A stretch of 64,000 nt of DNA from Mizuhopecten yessoensis (taxonomy: Eukaryota). How positions within the stretch are numbered: position 1 is the first letter of the stretch; the number at the start of each line of letters is the position of its first letter. The translations under genes were made by a program, and so were the position numbers. Shown piece by piece: positions 1,334-21,774 of this stretch. The notes under the pieces were generated by a model that had not been told where the DNA came from, did no database searches, and was given only the letters and a program-made list of their open reading frames with translations. The DNA lies in assembly GCF_002113885.1 (NCBI RefSeq), contig NW_018408774.1, forward strand, positions 148,164-212,163, read 5' to 3'.

Positions 1334-4300
1334 ATGGAGTACAACACATTGTCCCACAACCGGGAACCGTCCAATGACAGCGGGCTCCCTAAAAACAGTC
1401 TAAGCAGTGATGCTAGAGAAGAAGACCAAACATATGTGAAAAATGCTTTTCCTGGAAACCCACCTTCGCCCATGCTAGGTTCATACTCTCCTAAATCCGA
1501 ACCTGCTTTAGCACCATCGGAAATGAATTATAATGAGGTAAAATTGGACGTAAACACTTCTCAATACTTTTCCGGTCAGAAAGTGCCCCCTAGGACGGCT
1601 GAACCAAATTATGTCACGCTTCATCCAAAACCTGACAATCCTGTTAATATGGACATTGGCGACGTTATCAAGCAAGCAATTGCAGCAGGTCAGGAAAAGA
1701 ACCCGAATTCTTCAGTTGTTATACACATAGGAAATGTAACAATTAACAACGCCCCTGATCCTACTTATTACGGGCACGTGACCCGACCCCCTCCTGAACC
1801 CTGTCTGCCCCATCAATACCACGACGTAGGACAGCCAGGAGGTAAGTAATTCATTCTCGTGTACAAAACACTGCACCATCTTTATAATATGTTTTTGTTA
1901 ACTTTAGATTTGCTCTCCGTGCGAAAAAGACGGTTGACATGGTAATTAGTTATCATTGGTTAGGTTTCTACAAATACTTTCACATGGTGTTACAGTTATA
2001 GGTGTTAATTTAGGTATGTCGAATTCTCCTAATCAGACAGACCAATGGTAAGACGGAAGGGCGACAGACTGCCAATAAAGCATAATTCTATTTGTAATAG
2101 ATGTCTTCGTTTATCAAATAATAAATGAATAAACAAATAACAGCAGAATCAACACATAATAGTTCTACAAATCGTATAAAACACATAAACACTACAAAAT
2201 TGATTCTACCTGGGAAATTATCCCTAAAAAAATGATGGAATAGCCACCCAGACTGTATTTGTTTACAACAGTATAATGTCGTTCCATAAAACCAACAAAG
2301 TAAACATTTTACTGCATCGTACGACCACTTTTCCCATTGATCTGTTGCCCCATTGCAACATGTTGGATTTGAAATTTTCTCTACTTCCTGGAAACCTTTT
2401 AGTTCCTAGTGCCCTGCTTGACAATACCTCACTTTTGGCTATAAAGTTGTGCATTCTCCCAAGTGGGGTAGGCAATGGGTTCTGTCCCCAGGCCGGGCCA
2501 TACCAAGGGAGGGTAGGCAATGGGTACTGGACCCAGGCCGGGCCATACAAAGGTAGGGAAGGCAATTGGTTGTGGCCACAGGCCGGGCCATACCACGGAA
2601 GGGTAGGCAATGGGTACTGTCCCCAGGCCGGGCCATACCAAGGTAGGGAAGGCAATCGGTTCTGTCCCCAGGCCGGGCCATACCACGGTAGGGTAGGCAA
2701 TGGGTACTGTACTCAGGCCGGGCCAAACCAAGGTAGGGTAGGCAATTGGTTCTGTCCCCAGGCCGGGCCATACTAAGGTAGGGTAGGCAATTGGTTCTGT
2801 CCCCTGGCCCGGCCATACCAAGGCGGGGTAGGCAATGGGTACTGTCCCCAGGCCGGGCCAAACCAAGGTAGGGTAGGCAATTGGTTCTGTCCCAAGGCCG
2901 GGCCATACCAAGGTGGGGTAGGCAAGGGGTACTGTCCCCAGGCCGGGCCATACCAAGGTAGGGTAGCCAATGGGTTCTGTCCCCAGACCGGGCCATACCA
3001 AGGTAGGGTAGGCAATCGGTTCTGTCCCAAGGCCGGGTCATACCACGTTAGGGTAGGCAAGCGGTACTGTACCCAGGCCGGGCCATACCAAGGTAGGGTA
3101 GGCAATTGGTTCTGTCCCCAGGCCGGGCCATACCAAGGTGGGGTAGGCAATGGGTACTGTCCCCAGACCGGGCCATACCAATATCCTTATATATTCCCTG
3201 CTTAACTTTCAGCATTTAGGATTATCGCAACAACTGGTTCACCCGTTGTCAGTATAATGTGACCGGGCAGAATGCTGTTCTTGGTCCGCACTATAAAGTC
3301 AGCATCAGATCCGCGCTATCACTAGGAGGCAAGTACCCCAACATACCCTTCTCCAGCACACATACACACAAACACACATGCACACATGCACGTTTACACA
3401 TCACGCACGGAGTTACGTCCTTAAATAACCTTAACTGTAGACAGGACGTTAAACAAAATAAAAGCAAACCAATTATGACCTTGAATGAGGGTCAGCATGT
3501 GTAGAGATACAGCTTAAGAAGGAATATGACAATACAACATTTGATACCATTACAAACCTTACGATATAGCGTACGGAGGCACGGTAGTTTAGTGGTAGGA
3601 CGCCGGGCTCGTGACCGAAGGGTTGTGGGTTCGAGTCACGGCACGGCACTGTGTTGTATCTTTGAGCAAGATCTTTTAACTTTGTTGAATGCTAGCTGTT
3701 AGCGCCGAAATGGCAGCTCCGGCTGTGTGCTCCCCAGGGATTGGCTGGTTGCAAAGGCCCTATAACCACGGATAATAATTTGTGAACAGCTTTGAGACGA
3801 CCTACAAACTAGGTTGTGATAAAGCGGTATATAAGAACCTCGAAGTATTATTATTATTATTATTTAATATTTGCCTACAGCAGCATTTCATTAGAACAGT
3901 ACCAGGACACTTGGTCCACCAGCAGAGTCAACAATTTTGACTTAAATGAATAATGTAAATATAAAGAAAGAGATGCCTATTTAAAAAACAGTTTCTTGAT
4001 GCGAAAAGTACAGCTTGTCATTGTGATATATATTTGATTATGCTAGTTGAACCAATATCTTGTAATTGATTCCATATAAAGATGATCATCTCCGTCGGAA
4101 AAGTTTATCAACATCAGAAGAAGAAATGTACATTGGTATTCCTGGTAATAGAACACCGGTGGAACACAGCGGGACAGAGCAGCCGTCCTTGATAGTTGAC
4201 GACCATATCGACCCCTATAGAGAAACACAAAACTTCTTAATCCAATCCAGACCCAACTCCACAAGATCACAGGTATGTAATATCCAAAACATGTAACAGG

Positions 4301-7300
4301 AGAGGGAAAATGCACGGCCAGACCGGGGTTCGAACCCGGGACCTTCCGAACTCTAGACGGACGCTCAACCAATTGAGCTATCTGGTCGCCGACGATCGAC
4401 CCAGTCCAGTTTCGCTACATTCCTCCTTCCTTTAATAAAGTCTTCGACCCCGAAGACACTAGACCCTATACTATATGCTGTGGGTATATTTCGTTGGGCG
4501 CCAAATGTAACAGGAGAGGAAAAATGCACGGCCAGACCGGAAAAGATATTTTTCTCATGTTTCCTAATGAAGTTTGTTGATTTTTGCATTGTAAAACATA
4601 GGATCATCGGTGGACTGTATAGCTAATATTGGTGGGTTCCAGCCAACGTCTCTTCTTAAACCGTGTTTATCTTAAATATTATTTGGTTGTTGAAAAAGAA
4701 TTTGGATATTTTTATCAGGATGCACAACAGAACCTTGAAAATGTTTGTGAAACAACCTAAACAGATGGAACAAAACACATCTGGAAGCAGGATAATGTAG
4801 CTATCTAGTCCATTTGGGTGTTGTTTAAATTCAAACTGCTGTATCATTGAGCAGTGAGTTTTGGGCCATTCAAAGAGGTGACTGTAGGGCTAAGACAAAG
4901 TGTTTCTGTGTATATATCAACGACATTTATGATAAAATCCGGAAAATATGAAAGAAAATACAAAAGCTCACTTATCAATTATTCTTTTGGGTTTTAAATT
5001 AAGAAATACAGATTGATTGGTAACATCGGATAGATAAATGTATTTTTTTTTATCGAAACGACGTCAGGCTAAACTGAAATTTCTTCGAGGTATTTCTCCT
5101 TGAACAAACGTTTAAGAGGTAAGGAAACTATCCAAGATTATGCCATATGCGCACAGGAAACATATATTTAGGCTTTAGCTATTCCATTTGAATCTTTGCG
5201 TTACTCATTGAAATGAGTATATCTTGCTATGGATACATAGTTATTGAACTACTGCATGCATATACAATTTGATACACAATCTTTTTTATTGGCGATATTC
5301 CAAGTTGCTTTTCATCGCCGACGACTCTGTTGTAGCACACACAATCCTCCCCTCAGACGGAACAAAGGGATGCAGAGCCCGTCAAACCACATGGTAAGTT
5401 GATATATAAACAATAAACAGCAGTATTAAATTCTTCATGATATCCTCAGGTAAATACATGTATTGATGTATTTGTGTGTGAAGGAAGGGTGTGGGGTAGT
5501 GGGAGTGGATGTGTGCTAAAATGTCTATTTAGCTTGATGCCAGCTGTTTTGTAAAAACTTTGATTTCCGAACAGGATGTTATTGTCTATTTGTCATATTA
5601 CACCTTAATTTGTTTTTCAGTTTTCAGACACAATATTACGTGGGTTAGTTATGGTTCATCTCCGTAAACAACGGCTCCGTAGCCAATCTTTAAAGACATG
5701 AGTACTTCGGTCAGTTGTCCAATCTTTATAGACAACATTACTTCGGACATTTGTCCAATCTTTAAAGACAATATTACTTCGGTCAAATGTCCAAACGTTA
5801 AAAACAATAGTTTCTGGTCAGTTGTCATATCTTAATAGATAATATAACTTCAGTCGGTTGTCCAATCCTTAGAGACAATATTACTTCAGTCAGTTGTCCA
5901 ATCTTTATAGACAATATTTTACTATGAAAAGAGAAGACTTTATTTAAAAAGCAGAATCGGTATCGTGTTGGATATATGCAATTAACTGTCTGATATGTGA
6001 AACTTGTGGCATGACTGGTATAACAAATTATTCCAGTAAAGATATTTTGGACTTCAGCCAACAGGATGTCATTTTGTTTAAATAGTGTGATACTTTATCA
6101 AGATATTTTATTTGTTACGGCATTGAAAACCTCATTTTGAAGGATCATACTTCTGCTGCACATATAAATCTCCTGATTAAAAACTGAGGTATTTCGTAAC
6201 CGACATATATGTTTACATAGTCTATGGTAGACATCTTACCAGACATAGAGGCGGAGGAAATAGTAGAAGTAAGAAAAAAGTACTACCTCAACCAATCAGC
6301 ACACCAAATATCTCAGTCCGTTTTTATATAAAAAAAAAAACACGACACGTTTATCAAGACGTCTTTTACCTATGCATATATTGTCATGAATATCCTCTGT
6401 TCTCGTCAATAGTAACATAACAGCCTCCACACATAAGTACACACACACCCATCCACACACACACACTAACACACCTACCAGTAACATAACAGCATCCACT
6501 TCTCATTATTAACACACAAACTTCCCCCTCTTACTAGTAACATAACAGCCTCCCCTTCTCATTAGTAACACACAAACCTCCTCTCCGTACTAGTAACATA
6601 ACAGCCTCCCCTTCTCTTTATTAACACACAAACTTCCCCCTCTTACTAGTAACATAACAGCATCCCCTTCTCTTTATTAACACACAAACTTCACCTCTTA
6701 CTAGTAACATAACAGCCTCCCCTTCTCATTAGTAACACACAAACCTCCTCCCCGTACTAGTAACATAACAGCCTCCCCTTCTCATTATTAACACACAAAC
6801 CTCCTCTCCGTTCTAGTAACATAACAGCCTCCCCTTTTCATTAGTAACACACAAACCTCCTCTCCCTACCAGTAACATAACAGCCTCCCCTTCTCATTAT
6901 TAACACACAAACCTCCTCTCCGTTCTAGTAACATAACAGCCTCCCCTTTTCATTAGTAACACACAAACCTCCTCTCCGTACTAGTAACATAACAGCCGCC
7001 CCTACTCACTAGTAACACACAAACCTCCTCTCCTTACTATAAACAAAATTGCTAGTTTGAAGTAGAACATTCTTTATTATTCAAATATTATTTAACAGGC
7101 CCGGAGGGAAACCCTACCCAAATGACGATACACCCCCGACATTCCCCAGACGGTGTAAGTATGGTTTACTTAATGTGTAATAAGGGATGTTTTATTTGAT
7201 AGTATGCTAACTGTAAAAGGGAAACGTTTCGTTTTACACATATTTTATCATACCGTGTCTTTGACCTTTTAAGTCAATTTATGATAACATGAAAATAGCC

Positions 7301-10300
7301 ATTCTATGAAATAGGTAAATTACACGAATCCTCATGCTTGATATAATTGGTATACAGTAACGTCGCTTCACTTGCTTTTCTAGTCTCTCGAGAAGTTTGA
7401 TGTCCAGCTGGTCAGGCAGGGTTCGAATCAACGTTGGACATGCGAATTGAAGCCCTCACAAACTTCAAAGTCTCACTCAAGATCACCATCCATCGACACA
7501 TTAGATACCGATGTTACGTACGACAGTCATAGACAAGCACGTGACAGAAATCGTCCTACAGTGCCGTTAACCTTAGAGAGCGCGGGAACCCTCCAACCAA
7601 CAGAACGGTGGCCGAATACAGATCCCAGCTACAAGACGACCTTTAACGAGGATAGGAGGTTGCCTTACTGTGGCGACGACAACACATTGGTGAAGGAGAT
7701 ATCGTCACCGGTGGGGGAGGAACTCTGCAGACATATCGGACAAAGGGTAACATATGTAGAAAACCCTGTCTACATGGCCGACCAACCCTTCAGGTCAACA
7801 AATAACCTGACGTCATCTGTCAACACGCAGAATATGTTAGGTAAGAGAGACCTGGCCGCCAGTTAATACAATATTATATATGTATTCACTAATTCTGGTT
7901 GTGTTTGTAGTTGTGGGTTCGAATCCCTGTGCAACAAACAACTTTTTTCTCTGGTTACTACACAGGTCACAAAACAATAGTATAAGTCTGTATCTCGAGG
8001 CAACCCTTGGAAATGTTAAGGCGTTACCGCGTCAAATATGTATGTTAAGCTAGTATTAAATAGGTTGCAGATAAACCTTCATGCCTACTATGATTATAAT
8101 ATGAGTAGTTGAAAAAAACCATCTGATATATTTCTATTTCGGATTTAATACATCTTGGTTGATCATATATATAGTTTTAAAGGCTCAGGTTGCTTTTAAC
8201 AAAAACAGATATTAAATATTCCGGTTTGTAGTCAAAACAAACTTAGCCTTTATTATTTGTACCAGCCTTATGAATATTATTGTGAATGTATATATTTGTA
8301 TACAGCAAGACACGAGAGACCTCCCCTGATCAAAAGAGTTAATATATTAGGAGAACACGGTTATTAATAGACCACCTCCATTAACACTCTACATCTATCA
8401 AGAAACCGCCTCAATTTAAAGCCTACCTCGTGTAGGAGACCTACTCTATCAAAGTACTCACTGTATTAAGGGACCATCTCTTTAAAAGATTACCTCTGAT
8501 AAGAGACCATGTTTAAAACTGTTTACCGAGTCGGTTTTTAAAAGGTATCTGACATACGTGACCACTTATGAACGCCCTGAAGTTGGCATGTAATGATAAT
8601 TTTGAGTATGCAGTATGTGAGTTATTAATAAAAAGTCATGATTCAATTATGTTTTTCCTGTCTGATATAGGATACAGTGGTGAAATGGTATGTAAAATTG
8701 ACCAAATATCAACAATTTTAACTAATGCCTTTAAATAACATATATATAACATCTACTACTGCACTAGTTGTCAGTCGTATGACTGATCCCTGTTACTTAA
8801 CACAGCTAAGTGGGATCAGTATTCCAAAATTGTTCAGCACATTAATGAATGTGTATATATATGTATACTATCAGGTCCACATAGCGTCTTAAGTCGGATC
8901 AGTATTACAATGATGTGCAGAACATTAATAAATCTCTCTATATATATCACATATATAGTTTTATAAATATTTTATGCATAAACAAAAGACAAGAGTTTTC
9001 TACCGATTTCTCCTCTTTAGACGTTATTCATGTTGACAGGACAACAACAACAACACAGGAAGTCAATACTTCTTTGCTCACCTGATTACTTTTCTCAGAA
9101 AGAGAAGACTTTTTGTGTTGTCCTGTCAACATGAATAAACAATTCCCCTGATGAACTGATGAACCTCTAAAGAGGAGAAATCGCTAGGGAATTCTAAGAA
9201 ACTCTTGTCTTTTTTTTTTTTATATTCAACCATCACAAGGACTTTTTATCTGATTATATATATATATGCATATTTGTATCTGTTGCTAAGTGGCTTTGTT
9301 CTGTACATCCACACATCACTATATCTATGCACACATATTTTAATATTTTATAACTTTTATCAAACAATATTACGAACTGATTATATCATAACATGCCTTC
9401 CTTGAAATATATACGTGTGTCTCTGCGCTAGTCATACCAGGTACATAGTCAGACCATAACTATCTGTCGTGTTGACCTTCCAGTGTCATATCGATGACAG
9501 GCTATTCAATATACATACAGGGAAAACACGCAGATATGTTGTTCACATAATTTTCTTTTGAAGTAAAATGACTATATCATATATATGGCCGTTTAACGGA
9601 CCGTAAAGATTACCTTTCCTCGATACACCTAAAAAGTAAACAGGTGAGCAGATCTTAAATAAAATCCAGTCAGTGATTTGATTTTTCCATGACGTTCAAT
9701 CTAACAGGAAATTTTGGTCTGACTATGTATATCTTAAATAAAATCCAGTCAGTGATTTGATTGTTCCATGACGTTCAATCTAACCGGAAATTTTGGTCTG
9801 ACTATGTATACACCGCAATTTACAATGTTAATCATATAAACGGTCTATCATAATAATGTTGTTCCTATTTAACAACAATTGATTATCACGTTCATATAGT
9901 TCTGGTATAAAGTAAAAATATAAGATGGAGTGATATAGTAACTGTGTCGTTCCTTGATATCAAATCTTTTTTTAGAGTTGAAGCAAAGAGAAATAGAACT
10001 GATCGAGGGAAACCAAAATCATCATCTATCCAAAAATCCCTTGCGTTAACTATTCTTTTATACCGATAATTTTTTTTTTTATTAAAAGCAATGTCAGGAT
10101 TGCCATTTCCAACAAAACATGGAGAGCTTTATCTGCTCTTTCGATATCGTATCCCTTTGCGTTTTTATCTCACGATCGATAGAAATTGGGAGGGGTCAGG
10201 TCAGTACAAAGTCCGCCCACCTCTTATGTGATTGGCTTAGTCATTTCTGCGAAGCTTAAACTGATGAGGTAGTTAGTATGAACACGACTTGAGGGGGATT

Positions 10301-13300
10301 GAATTCCTGGCAACAAAATCAGAATTAAAAACACGGAGATACAGCTTATTAAAATTATAATATTTTCGATTACATATGTAAAGTTTCTTTTAAAACATTT
10401 AGACTAACTAATGAGAGTTGGATCGATATGATTACCTACCGTCTCCAATTTGGGACATTCTTTCCCACAACATGCGCCCGAATTGTCGATCTATTCATAC
10501 ACGAAAAACTCTTGTCAACTAGAGCAACACTTCAGTAGCTTTAACCTCACTATACTAACAACTACATTAATATGACGTCATAAATATGTGTGTGGTCAAA
10601 GGTCAACTAAATGGTGTGACCCGTATTTTAACCAATTAAACGCTCCCAAAGTGTTGCCCAAGTGATTGGGGCATGTGCTCAAGGCTTTAACAAATAGTTA
10701 CTTGCGTTGATTATACTATGGAAATGATAAAATATTATATCTATTGGAAAACAAATACCGTACTACAAAGTTTAAAGCATATGTCACGAAAACTGTTGAT
10801 GCATATCATTAAAAATTGTATATATGAATGCTAGTAACATGAAAGGTACCAAGCCGATAACAAACAAAAAGTATGTCGATTTGACCAAGATAAATCTGTG
10901 TATATTTTTTATTTGTAACTGTGAATTTAACACCTTTAGAATGAGGAAAATTTAAGAGACACCCCTTTTCAACCATTATATTGAATTAAATAAACAAAAA
11001 AAATTAACAAACATCTTTTTTTTTTATTTTTCTCTTTATATTTTTAGTAATACAACTTTCATCAAACCTTAATACATAGATAGACCCAGTGTTTATATTT
11101 ACTTTTTAATCGCGCGGACGTGGTAAGGAACGAAATTGCGAAATTTTCTCCCCGCGAAAATAAAACACGGTACATTGATTTAGTAAAGAGTTAAAACTGT
11201 TTTTGTTTAACAGGAACCGTCCCGGCCAGGCGTACACATGAATACAGGTAAGGATTTACATGGTTTTGATGATTATAATGATATTGCAGATAAATAAAAT
11301 TTGGTAAGGTTGCTATGGTTCGTAATATATAACTTACGTCTGATTTACATGAATTAATAGTTTAAGGATATATTATAGTATCTGCTGTGGTCAATTTGTA
11401 ACATAATCAATGGTTTCATATGCACCTTCCCCTTTGCTGTATTTCTAAGGACGTGTAAGAACACATTTGACATTGATGTTCATTATTTTTGTTTCACTGA
11501 AGGAAGTGCCCGTAAGGTGTAGTAAATGGCTACTTTTGTTGGATGTCGGCATCAATTAGCTAAATTGTATAATAAGTAATTACTGACTGTGTATTTCTAG
11601 TGACTAGTCGGGTTGTTCTGGTAGAAAACATTATGTGAAAGGTATCATGATAGTGGTTTCATAGACCGACACTTCCTACGTCATATTTGCTAATATATGT
11701 ACATTATACACATATAAAAGCCACCAAAATACCACATACTACCGAATAGATGAAAGCATTATTCTCTAAATCATACTTAAATCAGTGAACTTTTCTATTT
11801 TTCTTTTTGTATAGCTCGACTCTTCAAATATTTGGCGTGTACATCGTTACATGTTGGCAAGGATACATTGGAATAGTGTTATCGTAGGAGTATTTCGATT
11901 GTTTATTTTACCGTGTATTCTGTCCCTAGAACAATAAAATGAATCACCTTTGATGTCGAAACAATTTGCGTCCTGTAAGTTTGTGCAGACGTTTATCATA
12001 TATTGTGAGGAAGAAATAAACCAACGCGAGCTTCTAGTACCTAGTTTCATATATAAACATATTAATTTTGCAAATAAATAAAAACTAAGACGAGCACAAC
12101 TGAAAGTTGGTATCGTGTTCCATGTCGCCAGTCGTACGATACCATACATCTGACGCGTACAGCGAAGCTCGTTTAACAGACCTATATATCCTGTAGGCGT
12201 ATTGTTATAAGTGTATGCGTTTTGAACTGTTGCCAATTCTTTTCCTTTTGACTGTCATATCAAAACGACGTGGAACGTATATTTATGTTGTCAACTTTAT
12301 CAAAGCTTCCTTAAGTTATATAAAAGTTTATGGTACACTTATTGAAAAATATCGTATAACAGCTGTGTTGATATGTAAATATCCGTGGAGTAAAGTAGGT
12401 TAGCCTTGAAGTATGCATAACACCGCGTTGTCTTCCGGGTGTGAATAGCGGTATGTCTCTTTTAACGCAAAATTATAAACAATTGGGTTAGTTTAAAATA
12501 CATAATATGAAACAGGAACATATGCGTCGATGATGTCTTGACTAAACTATGAGAATGTGTTTAATATATTAACTTGTTAAAGTGTCCCCTGACATACACC
12601 TCCCCCATATTGTTTCTCGTCCTTCATTTCCCAAGCATAAACGAAGCCGACACCCTTCGTGGAAATTGCCCGGTGTATTTCATGGAACTTGTGCTGTCGT
12701 AGGTTTAAACAAAACCAATGAAAGAGCCTAAAAATCAAATTCGGTCATGTGGAAATGTGAAACCCGCTCCATTTAAAACTACTCAAGCACGGTACCTGTG
12801 CAGTGTTAGATGTTGGGCAATGTTTTGTGTTACTACGCATTACTTATGTACTCAATCATGTTTTTATCTTAACGAATGCAGATTCAGACTTAAAAAAATA
12901 TAAAGTGCTTATGAAATTTTCTTTATAAATATTATTACTTAATAATTTTATTAGTATCCTTTATTAATGCTTCAGTTCAAATGCGTTTTAAATGTTCATT
13001 ATCGGTACAAGGTTAAGGACAAGGGCAAAATCGAAACTCTGAAATCAATAAAATAGCTAATATTACATAGGTTATAATGTTCTAAAATCTCGAGAGAACA
13101 TGTTTTCACATGTCTTCGCTCTTTCGACTTTGTTATTGGACGTTAATTTTAAATTTGTGTACTATAAACTAGCTTAACCAGGAAGTAGGACGGACTGACA
13201 CGGTTATCGGACTATAACTATTATCTATTGATGTTTAAAAGAGGTTTGAGTACCGTGACATACAAAACATTTCAAGGTGGAAATTACAGACGTCAGTTTT

Positions 13301-16300
13301 AAAGGTCCGGTTAAGAAAACGATACGTAACTGCATTATAATTATTTTTTTAAATGTTTGAGATAAAATCTGACTTTAAATAACAGTATTAAGCTTCACAA
13401 TGTTTCTTTTTGAAGATTATACCAAATATGAGATACTGTTCATGTGTCGTAATTTATTTTTGTGGATACAATTTCAATGGCCAATAAACTCAATAATGTC
13501 AAATGTCAATTAAATAATTTAATTCAATAAAGTACTTTAACTGTAATTGATACGGTGGATCAATTATGGTTTCTTAGCAGATGACTTAGATGAATCCCCC
13601 CCCCCCCCCCTAAGTGTCATCATTAAATATACAACGAGCAATGGTCGATGAATCACCTCATTATTAGTATTGACGTCATTTCTGTCTGGGAAAAAGTCAA
13701 ACTTTTAGCTATAATTCTGATAAAATCTAGATAATGTTTTCTGTCTTGTATACAAACAGAAAAGTAAAGGATTTATTTAAAAAATGATATTGTGCAGTTA
13801 AGTTTTGTGGGGGTTCACATGAATTTTGTTGAGTTTTGTTATCTTCTCTGTTCTTATTGTTGTCTTCTCTGTTCCTATTGTTGTCTTCTCTGTTCCTATC
13901 GTTGTCTTCTCTGTTCCTATTGTTGTCTTCTCTGTTCCTATTGTTGTCTTCTCTGTTCCTATTGTTATCTTCTCTGTTCCTATTGTTATCTTCTCTATTC
14001 CTATTGTTATCTTCTCTGTTCATATTGTTGTCTTCTCTGTTCCTATTGTTGTTTTCTCTGTTCCTATTGTTTTCCTCTCTGTTCCTATTGTTGTCTTCTC
14101 TGTTCCTATTGTTATCTTCTCTGTTCCTATTGTTATCTTCGCTGTTCCCATTGTTGTCTTCTCTGTTCCTATTGTTGTCTTCTCTGTTCCTATTGTTGTC
14201 GCCTTCTCTGTTCCTATCGTTGTCTTCTCTGTTCCTATTGTTGTCTTCTCTGTTCCTTTTGTTGTCTTCTCTGTTCCTATTGTTATCTTCTCTGTTCCTA
14301 TTGTTATCTTCTCTGTTCCTATTGTTATCTTCTCTATTCCTATTATTATCTTCTCTGTTCCTATTGTTGTCTTCTCTGTTCCTATTGTTGTTTTCTCTGT
14401 TCCTATTGTTGTCTTCTCTGTTCCTATTGTTTTCTTCTCTGTTCCTATTGTTGTCTTCTCTGTTCCTATTGTTATCTTCGCTGTTCCCTTTGTTGTCTTC
14501 TCTTTCCTATTGTTGTCTTCTCTGTTCCTATTGTTGTCGCCTTCTCTGTTCCTATTGTTGTCTTCTCTGTTCCTATCGTTGTCTTCTCTGTTCCTATTGT
14601 TGTCTTCTCTGTTCCTATTGTTGTCTTTTCTGTTCCTTTTGTTGTCTTCTCTGTTCCTATTGTTATCTTCGTTGTTCCTATTGTTATCTTCTCTGTTCTT
14701 ATTGCTATCTTCTCTGTTCCTATTGTTGTCGTCTTCTCTGTTCCTATTGTTGTCTTCTCTGTTCCTATTGTTGTCTTCTCTGTTCCTATTGTTGTCTTCT
14801 CTGTTCCTATTGCTATCTTCTCTGTTCCTTTTGTCGTCTTCTCTGTTCCTTTTGTTGTTTTCTCTGTACCTATTGTTGTCTTCTCTGTTCCTATTGTTAT
14901 CTTCTCTGTTCCTTTTGTCGTCTTCTCTGTTCCTTTTGTTGTTTTCTCTGTACCTATTGTTATCTTCTCTGTTCCTATTGTTGTCGTCTTCTCTGTTCCT
15001 ATTGTTGTGTTATCTGTTCCTATTGTTGTGTTCTCTGTTCCTATTGTTATCTTCTCTGTTCCTATTGTTGTCTTCTCTGTTCCTACGTTGTCTTCTCTGT
15101 TCCTATTGTTGTCATGTACTTTTTGTGTTGCCTGATATAAAGTTTCCCAAACGAGTTTGTGGATTTGTTGCTTTTACTTTTGACTTTTGTCATTGGTAAT
15201 ATTGTCTGGATACTAATGGCATCTCACATGCACATCAGTGTTTCATTCTCATGGCCGTAGTGGCTTATAATAGATCGACATGTTTATGGTTGGTCGCCAC
15301 GGTGATGAGAACGGTTCTTCTTTATGTCAGTTTTTGCCCAAGCTTGGTATGAAGGTGCATTATTGCACTGTAAATTCTTTTCGGTGGACCATTTGCGACT
15401 ACAAGGGATTTATTTTTATTTGACTTCCATTTCAGATAAATCTTGTAACTATTATTATTTGTTCCGCATGACGGTTTATGGACTTTTCTCAAAACCTAAT
15501 GAAAGGATACGTTTGAAACCTTTCGTAGACATTGGTTGACATGTGTAGCTTTGCGTAACATGTTCCATGTGTATGACCGTCAAGACCTCTGATTGATTGA
15601 CATATTTATATGTCTACGCCAGGGTGATGCGACTAGTCCCTCTCTGTGTTTTGGTGTCTCCTTGTTCCTGTCTTTGTCCCTCCTTTTGTTTCGATGTCTC
15701 CTTTGTTCCTGTCCTTGTTTTTTTTCTTTTGCTTTGGTGTTTCCTCTGTTTCTGTTTTTCTTTGTTTTTCCTTCGATGTCTCCTCTGTTTCTGTCCTTGT
15801 TTTTTTCTTTTGCTTCAGTATCTCCTTGTTTTTTGTTGTTGTCCTCTCCCCATTCGCTGTGGTGTATCATCTGTTCCTCGTGTTGTATTTTATCTAGACT
15901 TTGACTAATGTGATTTTACCCTGGTAGGTAGACAATCTGGCACCTTTTGATTCCAATTACACTGAAATAAGCATTATGCTCTAGACGTGATAATTGATGG
16001 ATTGAATAATGACTGTTATTAAATATATTTATCATTTGTTGGCATTGAGTATCCATACTAATTTTATAAATTAAAATCAGTAACTTCAAAAATATCAGCA
16101 AACTATTAGATAAGACTGAAGGTCGTTTTTTGTTAAAGGAAACTTGCGGCGGATACATGATACAAGTTAATATTTGTGTAGAGTTACAAAAACAAATCCT
16201 AACATATAACAAACAGTACTTAATCAAGTAGGGACCTTTGTAGTGACATTGTAGGGACCATCGTAGTAACATTGTCGGGTCCTTTGTAGTAACATTGTAG

Positions 16301-19300
16301 GGACCTTTGTAGTAACATTGTAGGGACCATCGTAGTGACATTGTAGGGACCTTTGTAGTAACATTGTAGGGACCTTTGTAGTAACATTGTAAGGACCATC
16401 GTAGTAACATTGTAGGGACCTTTGTAGTAACATTGTAGTAACATTGCAGTAACATTGTAGGGACCTTCGTAGTAACATTGTAGGGACCTTTGTAGCAACA
16501 TTGTAGGGACCTTTGTAGTAACATTATAGAGACCTTTGTAGTGACATTGTAGAGACCTTTGAAGTAACATTGTCGGGACCTTTGTAGTAACATTGTAGTA
16601 ACATTGTAGGGACCTTTGCAGTTACATTGTAGGGACCTTTGTAGTAACATTGTCGGGACCTTTGTAGTAACATTGTAGTAACATTGTAGGGACCTTTGCA
16701 GTTACATTGTAGGGACCATTGTAGTAACATTGTAGGGACCTTTGTAGTAATATTATAGAGACCTTTGTAGTGACATTGTAGAGACCTTTGTAGTAACATT
16801 GTAGGGACCTTTGAAGTAGCATTGTAGGGACCTTTGTAGTAACATTGTAGGGACCATTGTAGTAACACTGTAGGGACCATTGTAGTAACATTATAGAGAC
16901 CTTTGTAGTAACATTGTAGTAACATTGTAGAGACCTTTGCAGTAACATTATAGGGACCTTTGTAGTAACATTGTAGGGACCTTTGTAGTAACATTGTAGG
17001 GACCTTTGCAGTAACATTGTAAATATGATCTTGAATTTTAATAGGATCATTATTTCCTGTTGTTTTGAAGTCTCGGCTTTAAAAAAATATCTTTTTTTTC
17101 TTTGGTTGACGTAATGGTGTCTTTTCTACTTTTCAAGGAGTTGCTCCAGTAGACATATTAATTACAACACGTGTATCCATACTTTTCCTCGTTTCACTAG
17201 CCGCCTTCCATACCTCAACATATCTCAAAGCCCTCCTCCCCCATACCTTTTTTTCTTAACAATTATTTCATAGATTTCTATGCCTCCCTCCATACAATGT
17301 CCAACCCCTTTATAATGCCGAAATTTCTTCAGACAAATGATGACAGTATAACAGGATTTTACTGCAAACATTTTCCTACGTAAATACAGAACAAAAACAC
17401 CACAGCGTCAGCACAAAAGGAAAACAATAAGGAGAAAATAAACGAGAAGGCACAAAAGGAAACCAGCTCTAAATAAGTAAATGTTCGCACTCAATGTTAC
17501 TCATTTCCTCTAGACTTTACCATTTGTCTAGACTTTAGATTTTCTCTTGACTTTGCCTTTACTTTAGACTTTAACTTTACTCTAGACTTTATACTTTACT
17601 TTAGACTTTCCTTTTCCTCTAGATTTTAGATTTTTCTCTAGATTTTACCTTTTCTTTAGTCTTTACTTTTCCTCTAGTCTTGACCTTTTTTTAGACTTTA
17701 CCTTTTCTCTAGGGTTGACCTTTTCTTAGACTTTACCTTTCCTCCAGACTTTAGATTTTTCTCTAGACTTGACCTTTTCTTTAGACTTTACCTTTCCTCT
17801 AGTCTTTATACTTTACCTTTCCTCTAGGCTTTATACTGTACCTTTCCTCTAGTCTTTATACTGTACCTTTCCTCTAGTCTTTATACTGTACCTTTCCTCT
17901 AGTCTTTATACTTTACCTTTCCTCTAGTCTTTATACTTTACCTTTCCTCTAGTCTTTATACTGTACCTTTCCTCTAGTCTTTATACTTTACCTTTCCTCT
18001 AGACTTTATACTGTACCTTTCCTCTTGTCTTTATACTGTACCTTTCCTCTAGTCTTTATACTTTACATTTCCTCTAGACTTTATACTGTACCTTTCCTCT
18101 AGTCTTTATACTGTACCTTTCCTCTAGTCTTTATACTTAACCTTTCCTCTGGTCTTTATACTTAACCTTTCCTCTAGTCTTTATACTTTACCTTTCCTCT
18201 AGACTTTATACTGTACCTTTCCTCTAGATTTTATACTGTACCTTTCCTCTAGTCTTTATTCTGTACCTTTCCTCTAGTCTTTATACTGTACCTTTCCTTT
18301 AGACTTTATACTGTACCTTTCCTCTAGACTTTATACTGTACCTTTCATCTAGTCTTTATACTGTACCTTTCCTCTAGTATTTATACTGTACCTTTCCTCT
18401 AGTCTATATACTGTACCTTTCCTCTAGTCTTTATACTGTACCTTTCCTCTAGACTTTATACTGTACCTTTCCTCTAGTCTTTATACTGTACCTTTCCTCT
18501 GGACTTTATACTGTACCTTTCTTCTAGTCTTTATACTTTACCTTTCCTCTTGTCTTTATACTGTACCTTTCCTCTAGTCTATATACTGTACCTTTCCTCT
18601 AGTCTTTATACTGTACCTTTCCTCTAGACTTTATACTGTACCTTTCCTCTAGTCTTTATACTGTACCTTTCCTCTAGTCTTTATACTGTACCTTTCCTCT
18701 AGTCTTTATACTGTACCTTTCCTCTAGTCTTTATACTGTACCTTTCCTCTTGTCTTTATACTGTACCTTTCCTCTAGACTTTATACTGTACCTTTCCTCT
18801 AGTCTTTATACTGTACCTTTCCTCTAGTCTTTATACTGTACCTTTCCTCTAGTCTTTATACTGTACCTTTCCTCTAGTCTTTATACTGTACCTTTCCTCT
18901 AGTCTTTATACTGTACCTTTCCTCTAGTCTTTATACTGTACCTTTCCTCTAGTCTTTATACTGTACCTTTCCTCTAGTCTTTATACTGTACCTTTCCTCT
19001 AGTCTTTATACTGTACCTTTCCTCTAGTCTTTATACTGTACCTTTCCTCTAGTCTTTATACTGTACCTTTCCTCTAGTCTTTATACTGTACCTTTCCTCT
19101 AGTCTTTATACTGTACCTTTCCTCTAGTCTTTATACTGTACCTTTCCTCTAGTCTTTATACTGTACCTTTCCTCTAGTCTTTATACTGTACCTTTCCTCT
19201 AGTCTTTATACTGTACCTTTCCACTAGTCTTTATACTTTACCTTTCCTCTAGTCTTTATACTTTACCTTTCCTCTAGACTTTATACTGTACCTTTCATCT

Positions 19301-21206
19301 AGTCTTTATACTGTACCTTTCCTCTTGTCTTTATACTGTACCTTTCCTCTAGACTTTATACTGTACCTTTCCTCTAGTCTTTATACTGTACCTTTCCTCT
19401 AGTTGTAGGTAGATCAATGTCCCAGTCAGCACCAGACATCAGACAAGTCACCCCCTTCCCACCACAGACAACACGTCGACCCACAGTTTTCCCGAATAAG
19501 CTGAAGACAAGGGGCCATGCATGTGTGGTACATGGTTACTTCAACATTCACGACGAGAAAGCTATAGAAGACGCCAAGAAGAGGCTGGAGACTGATGGGG
19601 AGGTAAACTAAACTTCGTACGAAAACAATCGTTTCTTGAGAGCAGCCCGAATCCTATATTTAACATTCGTATTGCCCAAAGAACGGACATGTACGTCGAA
19701 ACTGGTTGGGATTAGAGAACTAGCGCGTGAAAGATGTGCTCCGGGGAAGAAATTAGTTTCTGGTCTGTCCTGCCACAAAATCTCATTCTGTACAAGATAT
19801 CTTATATAGCAACGATATTTCAACTATATAAAATATCTTAAATTAAATAAGATGCCTTATAAAGTATACGAGATAATGTATATATTATATAATACTTGGA
19901 TTGCCGTAAACATAGTTTGATTTACTCCCAGGGTAAGGATAAATAATCGTTTCGCTGTGAATGACTTGTTTTCATTTTAAATCTGGTTCTAGGACGGAAA
20001 CTGGCTGGTGACGTTAGCAATAAGACAGCCAATGCACTCCATTTGTCTCCACGTTCGGCTACAAAACAAGACCAACTCATTTCCCATCAACAACCTCAAA
20101 GGCGAAAGGATCAGCATCGATACGACAAACAAAAAGGTAGAAATACAAATTTAGCCATTATTGGCCAAGTTATAACTTAATGGTTTGTTTTATGTCATCT
20201 CCCTCACCGCAACCAACTTTATATTGCTCTTTTTATTTACATTTACTTGAAAAGTGTCCCTCAAAATGTCGCTAATACCAACATCAAATTGCTATGCAGA
20301 ATGCAATGAGTGCAATTTAAATATATAACAAACACAGCGCAAGTTATACCTTTTTTCTGGCATACGGATTCTCCGTTATTAGTCCCCCATCGGTTCCCGG
20401 GGGGGAGGGACTATAATTTTGCGCTCCATCCGTCCGTCCGTCCGAGAAGTTTTTCCGGGGCGTAACACCTTTATTATTTCACCTGGAGTAACCAGATTTG
20501 GTGTACAAGGACATCTTGGTATGGCGGAGTACGGAGTGCATAATAAAGGTCACTATGACCTCACTGTGATCTATGCTTTGACCTTTGACCTTTACTTTTG
20601 AAAATGTTTGCCCGGGTCATATATTCTACATTATTTCATCTGGAGTTACCAGATTTGGTGTACAATAACATCTTGGGATGGCGGAGTGTGAAGTATGACT
20701 TGACCTTTGACCTTTAAGTTTTAAAAAGTTTGTCTGGGGCATAACTTCTATACTATTTTACTTGGAGTAACCAGATGGTGTTCAAGGAAATCTTGGGATG
20801 GCGGAGTGCAAGAAGTAGGTCACTGTGGCCTCACTATGACCTATGCTTCCGGACATGAATGTACTTTCGTTAAATATAGAAAGCATCACCGGTGGGGGAC
20901 TATGGATTGCCTTGTTGTAAAAAAGGCTTAAACACAAATGACTTGTTTCTTGCTCATAACTCATATTTCTTTATTATTTCCAATCAGAAATCACATGTAA
21001 CTGACACCATATTCAACTTCATCAATGTATGTTTTGTACTTTTATGTATTATTTTCCAGTCGTTTAAGTGTCTCTGTAAGCTGATCAACTATTACACAGT
21101 GAAGAAAACCTTACCTAACCAGAAAGTCAAGCTGGCTAAGGCTTTTCAACTACAGCAGCGAGGGAGTGGAGTGTATGACTCCTGTACCGAAGTGTCACAT
21201 CTCTGA
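1334..21206 (+). CDS. Uncharacterised multi-exon adaptor-like protein (~603 aa): disordered Tyr/Pro-rich N-terminus with RHIM-like motif, C-terminal degenerate SH2 domain
   Basis: Phase-consistent GT-AG exon chain: 1334-1841, 4082-4272, 5336-5393, 7099-7154, 7384-7840, 8671-8687, 11214-11247, 19403(or 19409)-19602, 19993-20136, 21060-21206 (1812 nt, stop TGA). ATG 1334 has aaccATGg context and an in-frame upstream TAA. The last three exons read HGYFNIHDEKAIEDAKKRLETDGE-DGNWLVTLAIRQPMHSICLHVRLQNKTNSFPINNLKGERISIDTTNKK-SFKCLCKLINYYTVKKTLPNQKVKLAKAF, matching the SH2 pattern (A..LL...DG.FLVR...F..L..LI.YY...L...L). The acceptor at 4081 (AAG) is the weakest junction. Confidence 0.65.
2377..3472 (+). 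mobile_element. SINE-like dispersed repeat carrying an internal 45-bp minisatellite
   Basis: Both flanks of the array align with the reverse complement of 46919-47372, including the 3' tail ggacgttaaacaaaataaaa(g/c)caaacca. Confidence 0.7.
2465..3181. repeat. 45-bp GC-rich minisatellite, ~16 copies
   Basis: Unit ggtagggtaggcaat(t/g)ggttctgtccccaggccgggccataccaa, seen as 15-aa periodicity in the overlapping ORFs. Confidence 0.95.
3576..3863 (+). mobile_element. tRNA-headed SINE (CORE-SINE-like), copy with internal deletion
   Basis: A box tagtttagtggta, B box ggttcgagtc and (ATT)n tail. Near-identical to 56057-56406. Confidence 0.8.
4292..4540 (-). mobile_element. TRIM (miniature non-autonomous LTR retrotransposon) with a tRNA-like sequence in its LTR (Helenus-like)
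   Basis: On the - strand: truncated 5' LTR ending TGTTACA (4540-4506), PBS TGGCGCCCAACG complementary to the tRNA-Lys 3' end (4503-4492), short internal region, polypurine tract AAAGGAAGGAGGAA (4433-4420), then a complete 128-bp LTR TGTAGCG...TGTTACA (4419-4292). Confidence 0.8.
4316..4387 (-). pseudogene. tRNA-like cloverleaf (anticodon AGA, short variable loop) inside the TRIM LTR
   Basis: gaccaga TAGCTCAATTGGTTGAGCG tccgt CTAGAGT tcgga AGGTC CCGGG TTCGAAC CCCGG tctggcc has A and B boxes and all four stems, with single mismatches in the acceptor and anticodon stems. It lacks the long variable arm of a real tRNA-Ser. Confidence 0.7.
5690..5916. repeat. ~36-bp degenerate tandem repeat, ~6 copies
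   Basis: Recurring ttgtccaatcttta(t/a)agacaatattacttcggtca. Confidence 0.8.
6409..7038. repeat. Minisatellite with ~28-bp alternating subunits (~57-bp dimer)
   Basis: agtaacataacagcctccccttctcatt alternates with (a/t)taacacacaaacctcctctccgtact. Confidence 0.9.
8980..9220. mobile_element. Foldback/MITE-like inverted repeat
   Basis: Nested arms: gacaagagtttt/aaactcttgtc, cgatttctcctctttaga/tctaaagaggagaaatcg and ttattcatgttgacaggacaaca/tgttgtcctgtcaacatgaataa. Confidence 0.7.
9441..9812. mobile_element. MITE-like element with duplicated right end
   Basis: TIR tacatagtcagacca / tggtctgactatgta, with a 79-bp direct duplication (9652-9730, 9731-9809) that includes the right TIR. Confidence 0.55.
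13836..15113. repeat. 21-bp pyrimidine-rich minisatellite, ~60 copies
   Basis: Unit ttgttgtcttctctgttccta. Confidence 0.97.
16227..17021. repeat. 23-bp minisatellite, ~34 copies
   Basis: Unit gtagggacctttgtagtaacatt. Confidence 0.95.
17505..19402. repeat. 25-bp minisatellite (~64 regular copies plus a degenerate 5' part) ending at a 3' splice site
   Basis: Unit tctttatactgtacctttcctctag. The last unit abuts the exon at 19403. Confidence 0.97.
19403..21206 (+). CDS. SH2-like domain exons of the + strand adaptor gene (19403-19602, 19993-20136, 21060-21206)
   Basis: Three exons join in phase 0 with canonical sites. The translation follows SH2 secondary-structure spacing: DGNWLVT at the FLVR position and F..L..LINYY at alpha-B. 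Confidence 0.75.
20376..20912 (+). mobile_element. Non-autonomous Helentron/HINE-like element
   Basis: Subterminal inverted repeat gtcccccatcgg (~20382) / ccggtgggggac (~20889), a (TCCG)n microsatellite, and ~3 internal repeats containing ggagt(a/t)accagat. Confidence 0.55.
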
Positions 21207-21774
21207 CCACCCATGTAATGAAGTGTCACATCTCTGATCACTCCTGTACCGAAGTGTCAGATCTCTGATCACCCCTGTACCGAAGTGTCACATATCTGAT
21301 CACTCCTGTACCGAAGTGTCACATCTCTGATCACTCCTGTACCGAAGTGTCACATCTCTGACCACTCCTGTACCGAAGTGTTACATCTCTGATCACTCCT
21401 GTACCGAAGTGTCACATCTTTGATCACTTCTGTACCGAAGTGTCACATCTCTGATCACTCCTGTACCGAAGTGTCACATCTCTGATCACTCCTGTACAGA
21501 AGTGTCACATCTCTGATCAATCCTGTACCGAAGTGTCACGTCTCTGATCACTCCTGTACCGAAGTGTCACATCTCTGAGCACTCCTGTACCGAAGTGTCA
21601 CATCTCTGATCACTCCTGTACCGAAGTGTCACATCCCTGATCACTGCTGTACAGAAGTGTCACATCTCTGATCACTCCTGTACCGAAGTGTCACATCTCT
21701 GATCACTCCTGTACCGAAGTGTCACATCTCTGATCACTGCTGTACAGAAGTGTCACGTCTCTGATCACTCCTGT
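21178..21774. repeat. 31-bp minisatellite, ~19 copies, beginning in the last codons of the SH2 gene
   Basis: Unit actcctgtaccgaagtgtcacatctctgatc. The first unit encodes SCTEVSHL-stop. Confidence 0.95.

What the first reader, a model, noticed from the sequence alone, without database searches (positions are those of the whole stretch)
1334..21206. Candidate novel signalling adaptor: RHIM-like amyloid motif + tyrosine docking sites + C-terminal pseudo-SH2
Seen: one phase-consistent exon chain links a ~500-aa low-complexity region (many Tyr motifs, PxxP stretches, a single hydrophobic IHIG island) to a C-terminal SH2-like domain. Known: a disordered pTyr-rich region plus C-terminal SH2 is the layout of SLP-76/BLNK- and SHB-type adaptors, and RHIM/cRHIM motifs drive amyloid signalling in RIPK1/RIPK3 and in Drosophila PGRP-LC/LE-Imd. 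I do not know a characterised protein combining RHIM and SH2. Inference: this may be a lineage-specific immune adaptor coupling tyrosine-kinase signalling to amyloid signalosome assembly.
Basis: partly seen in the sequence, partly recalled or inferred. Interest (0 to 1): 0.75.

Follow-up and report, generated by a model that had tools for sequence, protein, structure and literature searches.

The report
Scallop scaffold gene with degenerate SH2
This is a real ten-exon scallop gene for a mostly disordered scaffold protein, rich in tyrosine motifs, that ends in an SH2 domain lacking the usual phosphotyrosine-binding residues; its short hydrophobic island is conserved but cannot be shown to be a RHIM amyloid motif.

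Summary
The interval 1334-21206 (+) carries a 10-exon, GT-AG, phase-consistent coding chain. Its product equals a public 603-aa record, [quoted passage not shown]. Orthologues of 562-569 aa exist in three other scallop genera. Two lie on 1.8-kb contigs that can only be spliced transcripts, so the N-terminus and the SH2 share one mRNA there.

The C-terminal domain is a true but very divergent SH2. Pfam scores are below threshold in 4 of 4 proteins. hhalign against seven canonical scallop SH2s gives 90.6% probability, against at most 4.6% in 100 shuffles. The ESM model matches SH2 folds at TM 0.65-0.70. Both phosphate-binding arginines and the betaD4 histidine are replaced in all four proteins, so "pseudo-SH2" is right.

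Outside the SH2, tyrosine is the best-conserved residue: 10 of 17 invariant against 99 of 478 overall.

The IHIG island is conserved in place, but 0 of 4 proteins have the RHIM glutamine. The RHIM profile does not match it. No second copy exists in the genome.

Verdict: a scallop-restricted, uncharacterised scaffold; the RHIM/amyloid reading is unsupported.

The parts
1334..1841 (+). Coding exon 1 (ATG at 1334; aa 1-169 plus 1 nt; donor GTAAGT). Holds six invariant tyrosines (Y66, Y78, Y93, Y145, Y146, Y162), the hydrophobic island and an invariant R-x-PP-x-PC-x-P stretch.
1706..1750 (+). Conserved strand-prone island (aa 125-139; IHIG at 1721-1732). V129, I130, I132, G133, I137 and N139 are invariant in 4 of 4 orthologues. 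The tetrad is IHIG, INIG, IHIG, INIG.
4082..4272 (+). Coding exon 2 (aa 170-233). Acidic-run tyrosine motif EEE-x-Y-I (Y186) and D/T/K-P-Y-R (Y215), both invariant.
5336..5393 (+). Coding exon 3 (aa 234-253, phase 1 end).
7099..7154 (+). Coding exon 4 (aa 253-271).
7384..7840 (+). Coding exon 5 (aa 272-424). Conserved FDVQL...QRW.GELK block, T-Y-D/N-S-H (Y317), and N-P-x-Y-M (Y401, window 7762-7776).
8671..8687 (+). Coding micro-exon 6 (17 nt; aa 424-429).
11214..11247 (+). Coding micro-exon 7 (34 nt; aa 430-441).
19403..19602 (+). Coding exon 8 (aa 441-507): linker plus the first strand and helix alphaA of the SH2-like domain. Its acceptor is the last unit of a 25-bp satellite.
19993..20136 (+). 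Coding exon 9 (48 codons, aa 508-555): central sheet of the SH2-like domain. WLVT takes the place of FLVR.
21060..21206 (+). Coding exon 10 (aa 556-603 plus TGA): helix alphaB of the SH2-like domain and a tail ending S-H-L.
19516..21149 (+). Genomic span of the SH2-like domain (aa about 479-585), interrupted by two phase-0 introns.
21178..21774 (.). 31-bp satellite (19.3 copies). Its first unit supplies the last nine codons and the stop codon of the gene.

Best explanation
The interval is one protein-coding gene of a scallop. In the public record it is an uncharacterised protein of Mizuhopecten yessoensis, and UniRef's name for the alternative model of the same locus (P0007) is 'SH2 domain-containing protein'.

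Its product is most likely a cytoplasmic scaffold. About 480 residues without a recognisable fold carry a set of strongly conserved short motifs:
- ten invariant tyrosines, including an acidic-run EEE-x-Y-I site and an N-P-x-Y site;
- an invariant proline-rich stretch;
- one 12-15-residue strand-prone island;
- a C-terminal [S/T]-[H/R]-L end.

A C-terminal SH2-fold domain follows these.

Inferred mechanism. Tyrosine kinases phosphorylate the conserved tyrosines. These then recruit SH2- and PTB-domain proteins, while the proline stretch and the C-terminal tripeptide bind SH3 and PDZ modules.

The protein's own SH2 has lost the two phosphate-binding arginines (alphaA2, betaB5) and the betaD4 histidine in every orthologue, yet it is the best-conserved part of the protein. 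It therefore probably works as a phosphotyrosine-independent, or non-canonically binding, targeting or regulatory module.

The hydrophobic island is a conserved functional element of unknown partner. Most likely it is a strand-forming docking or self-association motif. It is not a demonstrable RHIM.

Shown: gene structure, orthologues, SH2 homology, loss of the pocket residues, conservation of the tyrosines and the island. Inferred: phosphorylation, partners, cytoplasmic location, any role in immunity.
For: GENE MODEL.
- Ten GT-AG exons reproduce P0001 exactly.
- Exon 1 at 100% identity sits in a 603-aa public protein.
- Orthologues P0002 (Pecten maximus), P0004 (Ylistrum balloti) and P0003/P0008 (Argopecten irradians cluster) are colinear from N-terminus to SH2 at 43-45% identity.
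- P0003 and P0009 (562 aa) come from contigs of 1826 and 1786 nt. That leaves no room for introns, so these are spliced transcripts.

SH2 DOMAIN.
- PF00017 is the only Pfam family at E<=10 in 4 of 4 proteins, always at profile positions 9-77 of 77.
- hhalign against seven canonical single-exon SH2s of the same genome: probability 90.6%, E 1.3e-6, score 40.1 over 79 columns. The reversed query gives 0.3%. Across 100 column shuffles the maximum is 4.6% and score 20.
- The ESM Atlas model of residues 470-603 aligns to SH2-bearing clusters at TM 0.65-0.70. Nine of 10 rows list PF00017 and the tenth is RasGAP1.
- UniRef names the alternative model of this locus, P0007, 'SH2 domain-containing protein'.

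POCKET LOSS.
- In the hhalign alignment the alphaA2 Arg pairs with invariant I495, the betaB5 Arg with T/T/S/T at 514, and the betaD4 His with invariant S536.
- All 7 of 7 canonical scallop SH2s keep both arginines.

SELECTION.
- 47% of columns are invariant in aa 479-585, against 6-35% in the other segments measured.
- Tyr is invariant at 10 of 17 positions outside the SH2, against 99 of 478 for all residues; Fisher p = 5e-4.
- The window holding the first half of the island, aa 121-134 up to IHIGN, ties for the best-conserved 15-column window outside the SH2, with 8 invariant.
Against: - Pfam SH2 scores (14.9-17.5 bits) are below the 21-bit cut-off.
- Single exons give no SH2 match in Pfam or PDB.
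- A profile of the four proteins finds no SH2 chain in the PDB at E<=10.
- The AlphaFold model from four sequences is poor: mean pLDDT 36, about 45 in the SH2. Foldseek found nothing at E<=0.001, although most weak top rows are SH2 chains at E 0.44-1.7.
- ESM feature scores of 0.88 or less are 'lead only' by the tool's own calibration.
- No transcript evidence was obtained for this species. The older model of the locus (P0007) uses another first exon.
- Phosphorylation, partners, localisation and expression are all inferred.
- Restriction to scallops rests on one search with the fast-evolving exon 1, so more distant orthologues may have been missed.
Confidence: 0.62

Rival explanations
1. The island (S-x-x-V-I-[H/N]-I-G-N-[V/I]-x-I-x-N) is a divergent RHIM/cRHIM-type amyloid nucleator. 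The protein would then couple tyrosine-kinase signalling to a templated amyloid signalosome.
For: - The island is the most hydrophobic 9-mer of the protein.
- It lies in a region without a fold and is conserved in place in 4 of 4 genera: V129, I130, I132, G133, I137 and N139 are invariant.
- It alternates hydrophobic and polar residues around a Gly-Asn pair, as strand-turn-strand amyloid motifs do.
- Two orthologues have Asn, an amide like Gln, at the tetrad's second position.
- AlphaFold draws a strand at 127-138.
Against: - The defining Gln of the tetrad (PMC13506858, passages) is absent in 0 of 4.
- PF12721 does not list exon 1 or any of the four proteins at E<=10.
- In the whole genome PF12721 gives 2 matches at E<=10, neither in this contig.
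- The loose tetrad occurs in 45% of 5000 shuffles.
- A homotypic motif needs a partner. A profile of the island region finds only itself in the genome (E 6.6e-34); the next hits have E 1.4 and 4.6, and the one with a long open frame reads as an unrelated sequence.
- RHIM-bearing PGRPs and Imd have not been found in molluscs according to PMC9835746 (passages).
Confidence: 0.07
2. The island is an ordinary strand-type short linear motif that docks by beta-augmentation onto a folded partner. One candidate is a SUMO-interaction-type motif, a hydrophobic [V/I]-[V/I]-x-[V/I] core after a Ser/acidic run (consensus recalled, not from a call). Alternatively it mediates simple dimerisation, with no amyloid state.
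For: - V-I-x-I is present in 4 of 4, preceded by E-K-N-x-x-S-(S/G) in 4 of 4.
- The island sits among other conserved short motifs.
- There is no second copy in the genome, as expected for a motif-domain rather than a motif-motif contact.
Against: - No motif library was searched; the consensus is recalled.
- The invariant G133 and N139 and the downstream [V/I]-x-I-x-N are not explained by a four-residue core.
Confidence: 0.2
3. The N-terminal half is not fully disordered. The island strand, the strand at 68-78 and the three-strand block at 260-293 would form a small discontinuous sheet, so the island is a buried structural strand.
For: - The only parts of the AlphaFold model with block pLDDT above 60 are 111-120 and 261-290, and strands are drawn at 68-78, 127-138, 260-267, 273-281 and 288-293.
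- These segments are conserved.
Against: - pLDDT never reaches 70 over these blocks.
- The ESM Atlas finds no usable look-alike for residues 60-300: no feature hits, TM 0.26 or less.
- There are no Pfam families there.
- I could not inspect the strand pairing in the model.
Confidence: 0.1
4. The 603-aa model is chimeric in this species. Exon 1 would belong to another transcript, and the SH2 gene would start elsewhere, as in the older model P0007.
For: - P0007 (558 aa) matches P0001 only from residue 170 on and has a different N-terminus.
- No reads could be laid.
- A search for shorter proteins containing exon 1 found none.
Against: - The N-terminus of P0007 reads like the 45-bp tandem repeat at 2459-3181. 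It has no counterpart in the orthologues.
- All three other genera have an exon-1-like N-terminus fused to the same SH2, two of them on intron-free contigs.
- The exon 1 donor phase fits the exon 2 acceptor.
Confidence: 0.04

Closest known systems
SLP-76 / BLNK / CLNK adaptor family
   Same: Long region of tyrosine and proline motifs followed by a C-terminal SH2. BLNK clusters are the first two structural neighbours of the ESM model, at TM 0.70 and 0.69.
   Different: - No sequence orthology was shown.
- No SAM domain or any other Pfam family is present.
- The SH2 lacks both phosphate-binding arginines.
- The TM values equal those for SOCS7, Grb2 and SHP2 SH2s, so the ranking does not discriminate.
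SHB / SHD / SHE / SHF adaptors
   Same: Proline- and tyrosine-rich N-terminal part with a C-terminal SH2 at the very end of the protein (layout recalled, not from a call).
   Different: Not tested here by sequence. No PTB-like region was detected. The SH2 pocket is degenerate.
Human SH2 domains without the FLVR arginine (RIN2, TYK2, SH2D5)
   Same: The betaB5 arginine is replaced. PMC7530234 (passages read) says these three are the only human cases and that they cannot bind phosphotyrosine through that residue. TYK2 uses the domain for receptor binding.
   Different: Here the substitute is Thr or Ser, not His or Trp. The alphaA2 Arg and betaD4 His are lost as well. The domain context is different.
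RHIM (RIPK1, RIPK3, ZBP1, TRIF) and insect cRHIM (PGRP-LC/LE, Imd)
   Same: A short hydrophobic strand-prone segment with a central x-I-G, in a disordered region, conserved among orthologues.
   Different: - No Gln in the tetrad.
- No PF12721 match.
- No partner copy in the genome.
- No death, kinase or PGRP domain.
- Amyloid formation is untested.

Membership tests
SH2 domain superfamily (PF00017) | Profile-level sequence homology to SH2 domains | tested here: met
   hhalign of the four-protein C-terminal block against seven canonical SH2s of the same genome: probability 90.6%, E 1.3e-6, 79 columns. Reversed query 0.3%. In 100 column shuffles the maximum is 4.6%.
SH2 domain superfamily (PF00017) | Pfam score over the curated cut-off (21 bits) | tested here: not met
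   14.9, 15.9, 16.4 and 17.5 bits in P0001-P0004, at the same place each time. Single exons give no match. Membership therefore rests on the profile-profile and fold evidence, not on Pfam.
SH2 domain superfamily (PF00017) | SH2 fold (sheet flanked by helices alphaA and alphaB) | tested here: inconclusive
   For: the ESM Atlas model of aa 470-603 aligns to SH2 clusters at TM 0.65-0.70 in 10 rows, and AlphaFold's secondary-structure order is strand, helix, four strands, helix. Against: the AlphaFold model has low confidence, and Foldseek gives no match at E<=0.001.
Canonical phosphotyrosine-reading SH2 | FLVR (betaB5) arginine | tested here: not met
   T, T, S, T in the four orthologues, against R in 7 of 7 canonical scallop SH2s.
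Canonical phosphotyrosine-reading SH2 | alphaA2 arginine and betaD4 histidine | tested here: not met
   They pair with invariant I495 and invariant S536 in the hhalign alignment. An alternative register by eye also puts a hydrophobic residue at alphaA2.
RHIM (PF12721) | Core tetrad (V/I)-Q-(V/I/L/C)-G (PMC13506858) | tested here: not met
   IHIG, INIG, IHIG, INIG. The canonical pattern is found in 0 of 4 proteins anywhere.
RHIM (PF12721) | Match to the RHIM profile | tested here: not met
   Not listed at E<=10 for exon 1 or for the four proteins. The genome scan at E<=10 gave 2 matches out of 36 scored candidates, none on this contig. HMMER filters drop most matches above E of about 0.1.
RHIM (PF12721) | Same motif in a partner protein (homotypic interaction) | tested here: inconclusive
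   The island profile A2 against the own genome gives self at E 6.6e-34, then E 1.4 and 4.6. A motif of about 15 residues is near the limit of such a search.
RHIM (PF12721) | Forms cross-beta fibrils needed for signalling | not testable with these tools
   Needs peptide or cell experiments.
SLP-76/BLNK-type adaptors | Orthology by sequence outside the SH2, and a functional SH2 | tested here: not met
   The exon-1 search of 1.84 billion representatives found no SLP-76/BLNK-type protein: only the gene's own product, three scallop orthologues and two unrelated repeat proteins. No SAM or other family is present. The SH2 pocket is degenerate. The layout is shared; membership is not shown.

The most novel reading that the evidence does not exclude
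The conserved I-[H/N]-I-G-N-[V/I]-x-I-x-N island is a Gln-less relative of RHIM-type strand-turn-strand motifs. It would let a tyrosine-phosphorylated scaffold switch into a self-templating higher-order assembly. The degenerate SH2 would then act as a phosphorylation-independent anchor. This would be a tyrosine-kinase-to-amyloid link not described in any animal.
Probability: 0.06. Interest if true: 0.8.

Novelty: new variant of a known kind. Interest (0 to 1): 0.33.

Why it matters
If the reading holds, scallops carry a conserved scaffold of the SLP-76/SHB type whose own SH2 has lost all three canonical phosphotyrosine contacts, yet remains the most constrained part of the protein across four genera. 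Natural SH2 domains without the FLVR arginine are rare: three in humans according to PMC7530234. A stable invertebrate example with an intact set of tyrosine motifs would help in asking what an SH2 fold does when it no longer reads phosphotyrosine.

The conserved island is a small, testable candidate for a self-association element. For genome annotation, the result favours the 603-aa model over the older 558-aa model, whose N-terminus is read from a tandem repeat.

Tried and rejected
SEARCHES THAT GAVE LITTLE.
- Exon-by-exon searches gave no SH2 signal in Pfam or in PDB phmmer. The LRR/repebody rows for the last exon are sums of tiny repeat matches and are rejected.
- A PDB search with the profile of the four proteins found only acetate kinase at E 0.9; rejected as chance.
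- The PASTA resemblance of aa 100-137 is rejected. It appeared as Pfam E 0.079 and as a bacterial PASTA-repeat protein, P0005, with E 2.3e-8 summed over 10 stretches. It depends on residues not conserved in the orthologues, and PASTA is not listed for P0001-P0004.
- P0006 is a repeat protein and is rejected.
- The search for homologous proteins on the SH2 region of P0004 found only itself among 21 candidates. The same tool on exon 1 found nothing in its length range. Neither says anything about more distant relatives.

STRUCTURE.
- AlphaFold on four sequences gave mean pLDDT 36. Foldseek on that model gave nothing at E<=0.001.
- The ESM Atlas gave no usable look-alike for aa 60-300.

LITERATURE.
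- Searches for the gene's identifiers returned 0 papers.
- A search for RHIM, SH2 domain and bivalve terms gave nothing relevant.
- Supplementary files were not consulted. Expression tables in scallop transcriptome papers could bear on the immune claim.

NOT TESTED. Expression, haemocyte or infection response, and presence in non-pectinid molluscs.
Full report
WHAT IS THERE.

The window is AT-rich eukaryotic DNA, full of satellites. On the + strand I first worked out a phase-consistent set of exons by hand from open frames and splice sites.

A HMMER search of 1.84 billion representative proteins with the exon-1 peptide alone (169 aa) returned six proteins:
- P0001, 603 aa, 100% identical over residues 1-169.
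- Three proteins of 562-569 aa at 46-50% identity over the matched stretch (P0002, P0003, P0004).
- Two unrelated repeat proteins, P0005 and P0006.

The word-index search named the records:
- P0001 is [quoted passage not shown].
- P0007 is a second model of the same locus, "hypothetical protein KP79_PYT04937". UniRef calls it "SH2 domain-containing protein".
- P0002 is from Pecten maximus and P0004 from Ylistrum balloti.
- P0003 clusters with an Argopecten irradians protein.

Exact peptide mapping places P0001 on ten exons: 1334-1841, 4082-4272, 5336-5393, 7099-7154, 7384-7840, 8671-8687, 11214-11247, 19403-19602, 19993-20136 and 21060-21206. All have AG/GT borders.

The full-length analyses used the database record by its id.

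ONE TRANSCRIPT?

Support:
- The four proteins are colinear from the first residues to the C-terminus.
- P0003 and P0009 (562 aa, so 1689 nt of coding sequence with the stop) come from contigs of only 1826 and 1786 nt. Those contigs cannot contain introns, whereas the gene spans 20 kb here. In the Argopecten lineage, then, the N-terminal exon and the SH2 are on one spliced RNA.

Limits for this species:
- I have only the gene models.
- P0007 differs from P0001 solely in its first 124 residues. These read like the translation of the 45-bp tandem repeat at 2459-3181 and have no counterpart in the orthologues.
- Twenty of the 24 listed runs hold all sampled words of exon 5, but none is on record as RNA.
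No reads were laid.

THE SH2-LIKE DOMAIN.

Negative or weak results:
- Single exons give no SH2 match in Pfam or PDB.
- The full proteins give PF00017 as the only family at E<=10 in 4 of 4, always at profile positions 9-77 of 77. The scores are 14.9-17.5 bits, under the 21-bit cut-off.
- A profile of the four proteins finds no SH2 chain in the PDB.
- AlphaFold with four sequences is poor, with mean pLDDT 36.
- Foldseek on that model has nothing at E<=0.001, although most weak top rows are SH2 chains.

Test with canonical scallop SH2s:
- I took canonical SH2 domains from the same genome. The PF00017 scan gave 48 matches.
- Seven distinct ones lie in single exons over positions 1-75 or more of the profile.
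- I compared their alignment with the C-terminal block of the family by hhalign: probability 90.6%, E 1.3e-6, score 40.1, 79 columns.
- The reversed query gives 0.3%. In 100 column shuffles the maximum is 4.6% and score 20.

Independent support: the ESM Atlas holds a model of this protein. Its residues 470-603 align to SH2-bearing clusters at TM 0.65-0.70 in all ten rows (BLNK, SOCS7, Srms, SHP2, Grb2 and others). Feature scores of 0.88 or less also point to SH2, but are only leads.

I conclude that the domain is a real, very divergent SH2.

A DEGENERATE POCKET.

In the hhalign alignment:
- the alphaA2 arginine of canonical domains pairs with I495, which is invariant;
- the FLVR (betaB5) arginine pairs with T514 (T, T, S, T);
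- the betaD4 histidine pairs with S536, which is invariant.

All seven canonical scallop SH2s keep both arginines. The roles of these residues are established knowledge. PMC7530234 (passages read) states that very few SH2 domains lack the FLVR arginine, only RIN2, TYK2 and SH2D5 in humans, and that such domains cannot bind phosphotyrosine through it.

Yet this block is the most conserved part of the protein: 47% invariant columns, against 6-35% elsewhere.

THE N-TERMINAL 480 RESIDUES.

- No Pfam family is found there and no Atlas look-alike. The models are low-confidence.
- Conservation is concentrated in short blocks.
- Tyrosine is the best-conserved residue type: 10 of 17 invariant, against 99 of 478 for all residues, Fisher p = 5e-4.
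- The invariant sites include [M/I]-x-Y-N-x-V (Y66), P-x-Y-V (Y93), EE-x-x-Y-I (Y186), P-Y-R (Y215), T-Y-D/N-S-H (Y317) and N-P-x-Y-M (Y401).
- An R-x-P-P-x-P-C-x-P stretch is invariant.
- All four proteins end in [S/T]-[H/R]-L.

By recalled consensus motifs (no call), these read as kinase target and SH2/PTB docking sites, an SH3 ligand, and a class I PDZ ligand (or a PTS1-like tripeptide). This fits a phosphorylation-dependent scaffold, but none of it was tested.

THE ISLAND AND THE RHIM CLAIM.

For the island as a functional element:
- VIHIGNVTI is the most hydrophobic 9-mer in the protein.
- It is conserved in place, with V129, I130, I132, G133, I137 and N139 invariant. This rules out a chance feature.

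Against RHIM identity:
- The defining tetrad (V/I)-Q-(V/I/L/C)-G (PMC13506858, passages) is met by 0 of 4 proteins. They have IHIG or INIG.
- The loose form [VI]x[VILC]G appears in 45% of 5000 shuffles of the protein.
- PF12721 is not listed at E<=10 for exon 1 or for the proteins.
- A PF12721 scan of the whole genome gives two weak matches elsewhere and none here.
- A profile of the island region finds only itself in the genome (E 6.6e-34; next E 1.4 and 4.6). The long-frame hit reads as an unrelated sequence. No homotypic partner is visible, though a motif this short is hard to find.
- PMC9835746 (passages) reports that RHIM-bearing PGRPs and Imd have not been found in molluscs.
- An earlier follow-up in this scan reached a similar verdict for another RHIM-flagged scallop protein (s1-574230). 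I did not test that one.

I keep the amyloid reading as a low-probability possibility and prefer a strand-type docking or self-association motif.

VERDICT.

- Supported: adaptor layout, pseudo-SH2, restricted distribution.
- Unsupported: RHIM and amyloid.
- Untested: an immune role.

The gene is already in public databases as an uncharacterised protein. I found no paper naming it. It is best described as a scallop-lineage variant of the tyrosine-motif scaffold with a C-terminal SH2, unusual in that the SH2 pocket is completely degenerate.

Noticed in passing
window 21178-21774: A 31-bp satellite (19.3 copies) starts inside the last coding exon. Its first unit encodes the last nine residues and the TGA stop. 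Most later units re-encode the same C-terminal peptide plus stop in varying frames. The Ylistrum orthologue has a similar tail, so the array seems to have grown out of the gene's 3' end.
   Followed up: partly
window 17778-19403: A 25-bp satellite (65 copies, 95% matches) fills the end of intron 7 and runs exactly up to exon 8. Each unit is pyrimidine-rich and ends in CTAG, so the real acceptor is the last of about 65 look-alike acceptor sites. How splicing picks the last one is unexplained.
   Followed up: no
window 2459-3181: A 45-bp tandem repeat (16 copies) in intron 1 is open in several frames. It appears to supply the N-terminus of the older gene model P0007. This is probably an annotation artefact.
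   Followed up: partly
window 4314-4388 (-): ARAGORN calls a tRNA-Ser(aga)-like sequence 42 nt after the exon 2 donor. Similar tRNA-like peptide signatures appear in ORFs elsewhere in the window.
   Followed up: partly
window 13836-15113 and 16228-17021: Two further large satellites lie in intron 7: 21 bp x 60 and 23 bp x 30. They are open in all three + frames for over 430 codons and give spurious long ORFs.
   Followed up: no
window 33549-51029 (-): A large gene on the opposite strand has long exons (a 719-aa open exon at 39147-41306 and a 216-aa one at 50379-51029). One exon gives a weak Peptidase_C50 (separase) match, E 0.064 and below cut-off.
   Followed up: partly
L034 (own genome, another contig; match at local 1501-1533): The RHIM profile scan picked a short 34-aa open frame containing a canonical V-Q-I-G tetrad followed by Q-N-N-Y-L (18.3 bits, E 3.1, below cut-off). 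It could be a genuine RHIM of a scallop RIPK-like gene, or chance.
   Followed up: no
P0001-P0004 C-termini (window 21195-21203): All four orthologues end in [S/T]-[H/R]-L (SHL, TRL, THL, SHL). This fits a class I PDZ ligand, and in two cases a PTS1-like tripeptide (the consensus motifs are recalled).
   Followed up: no
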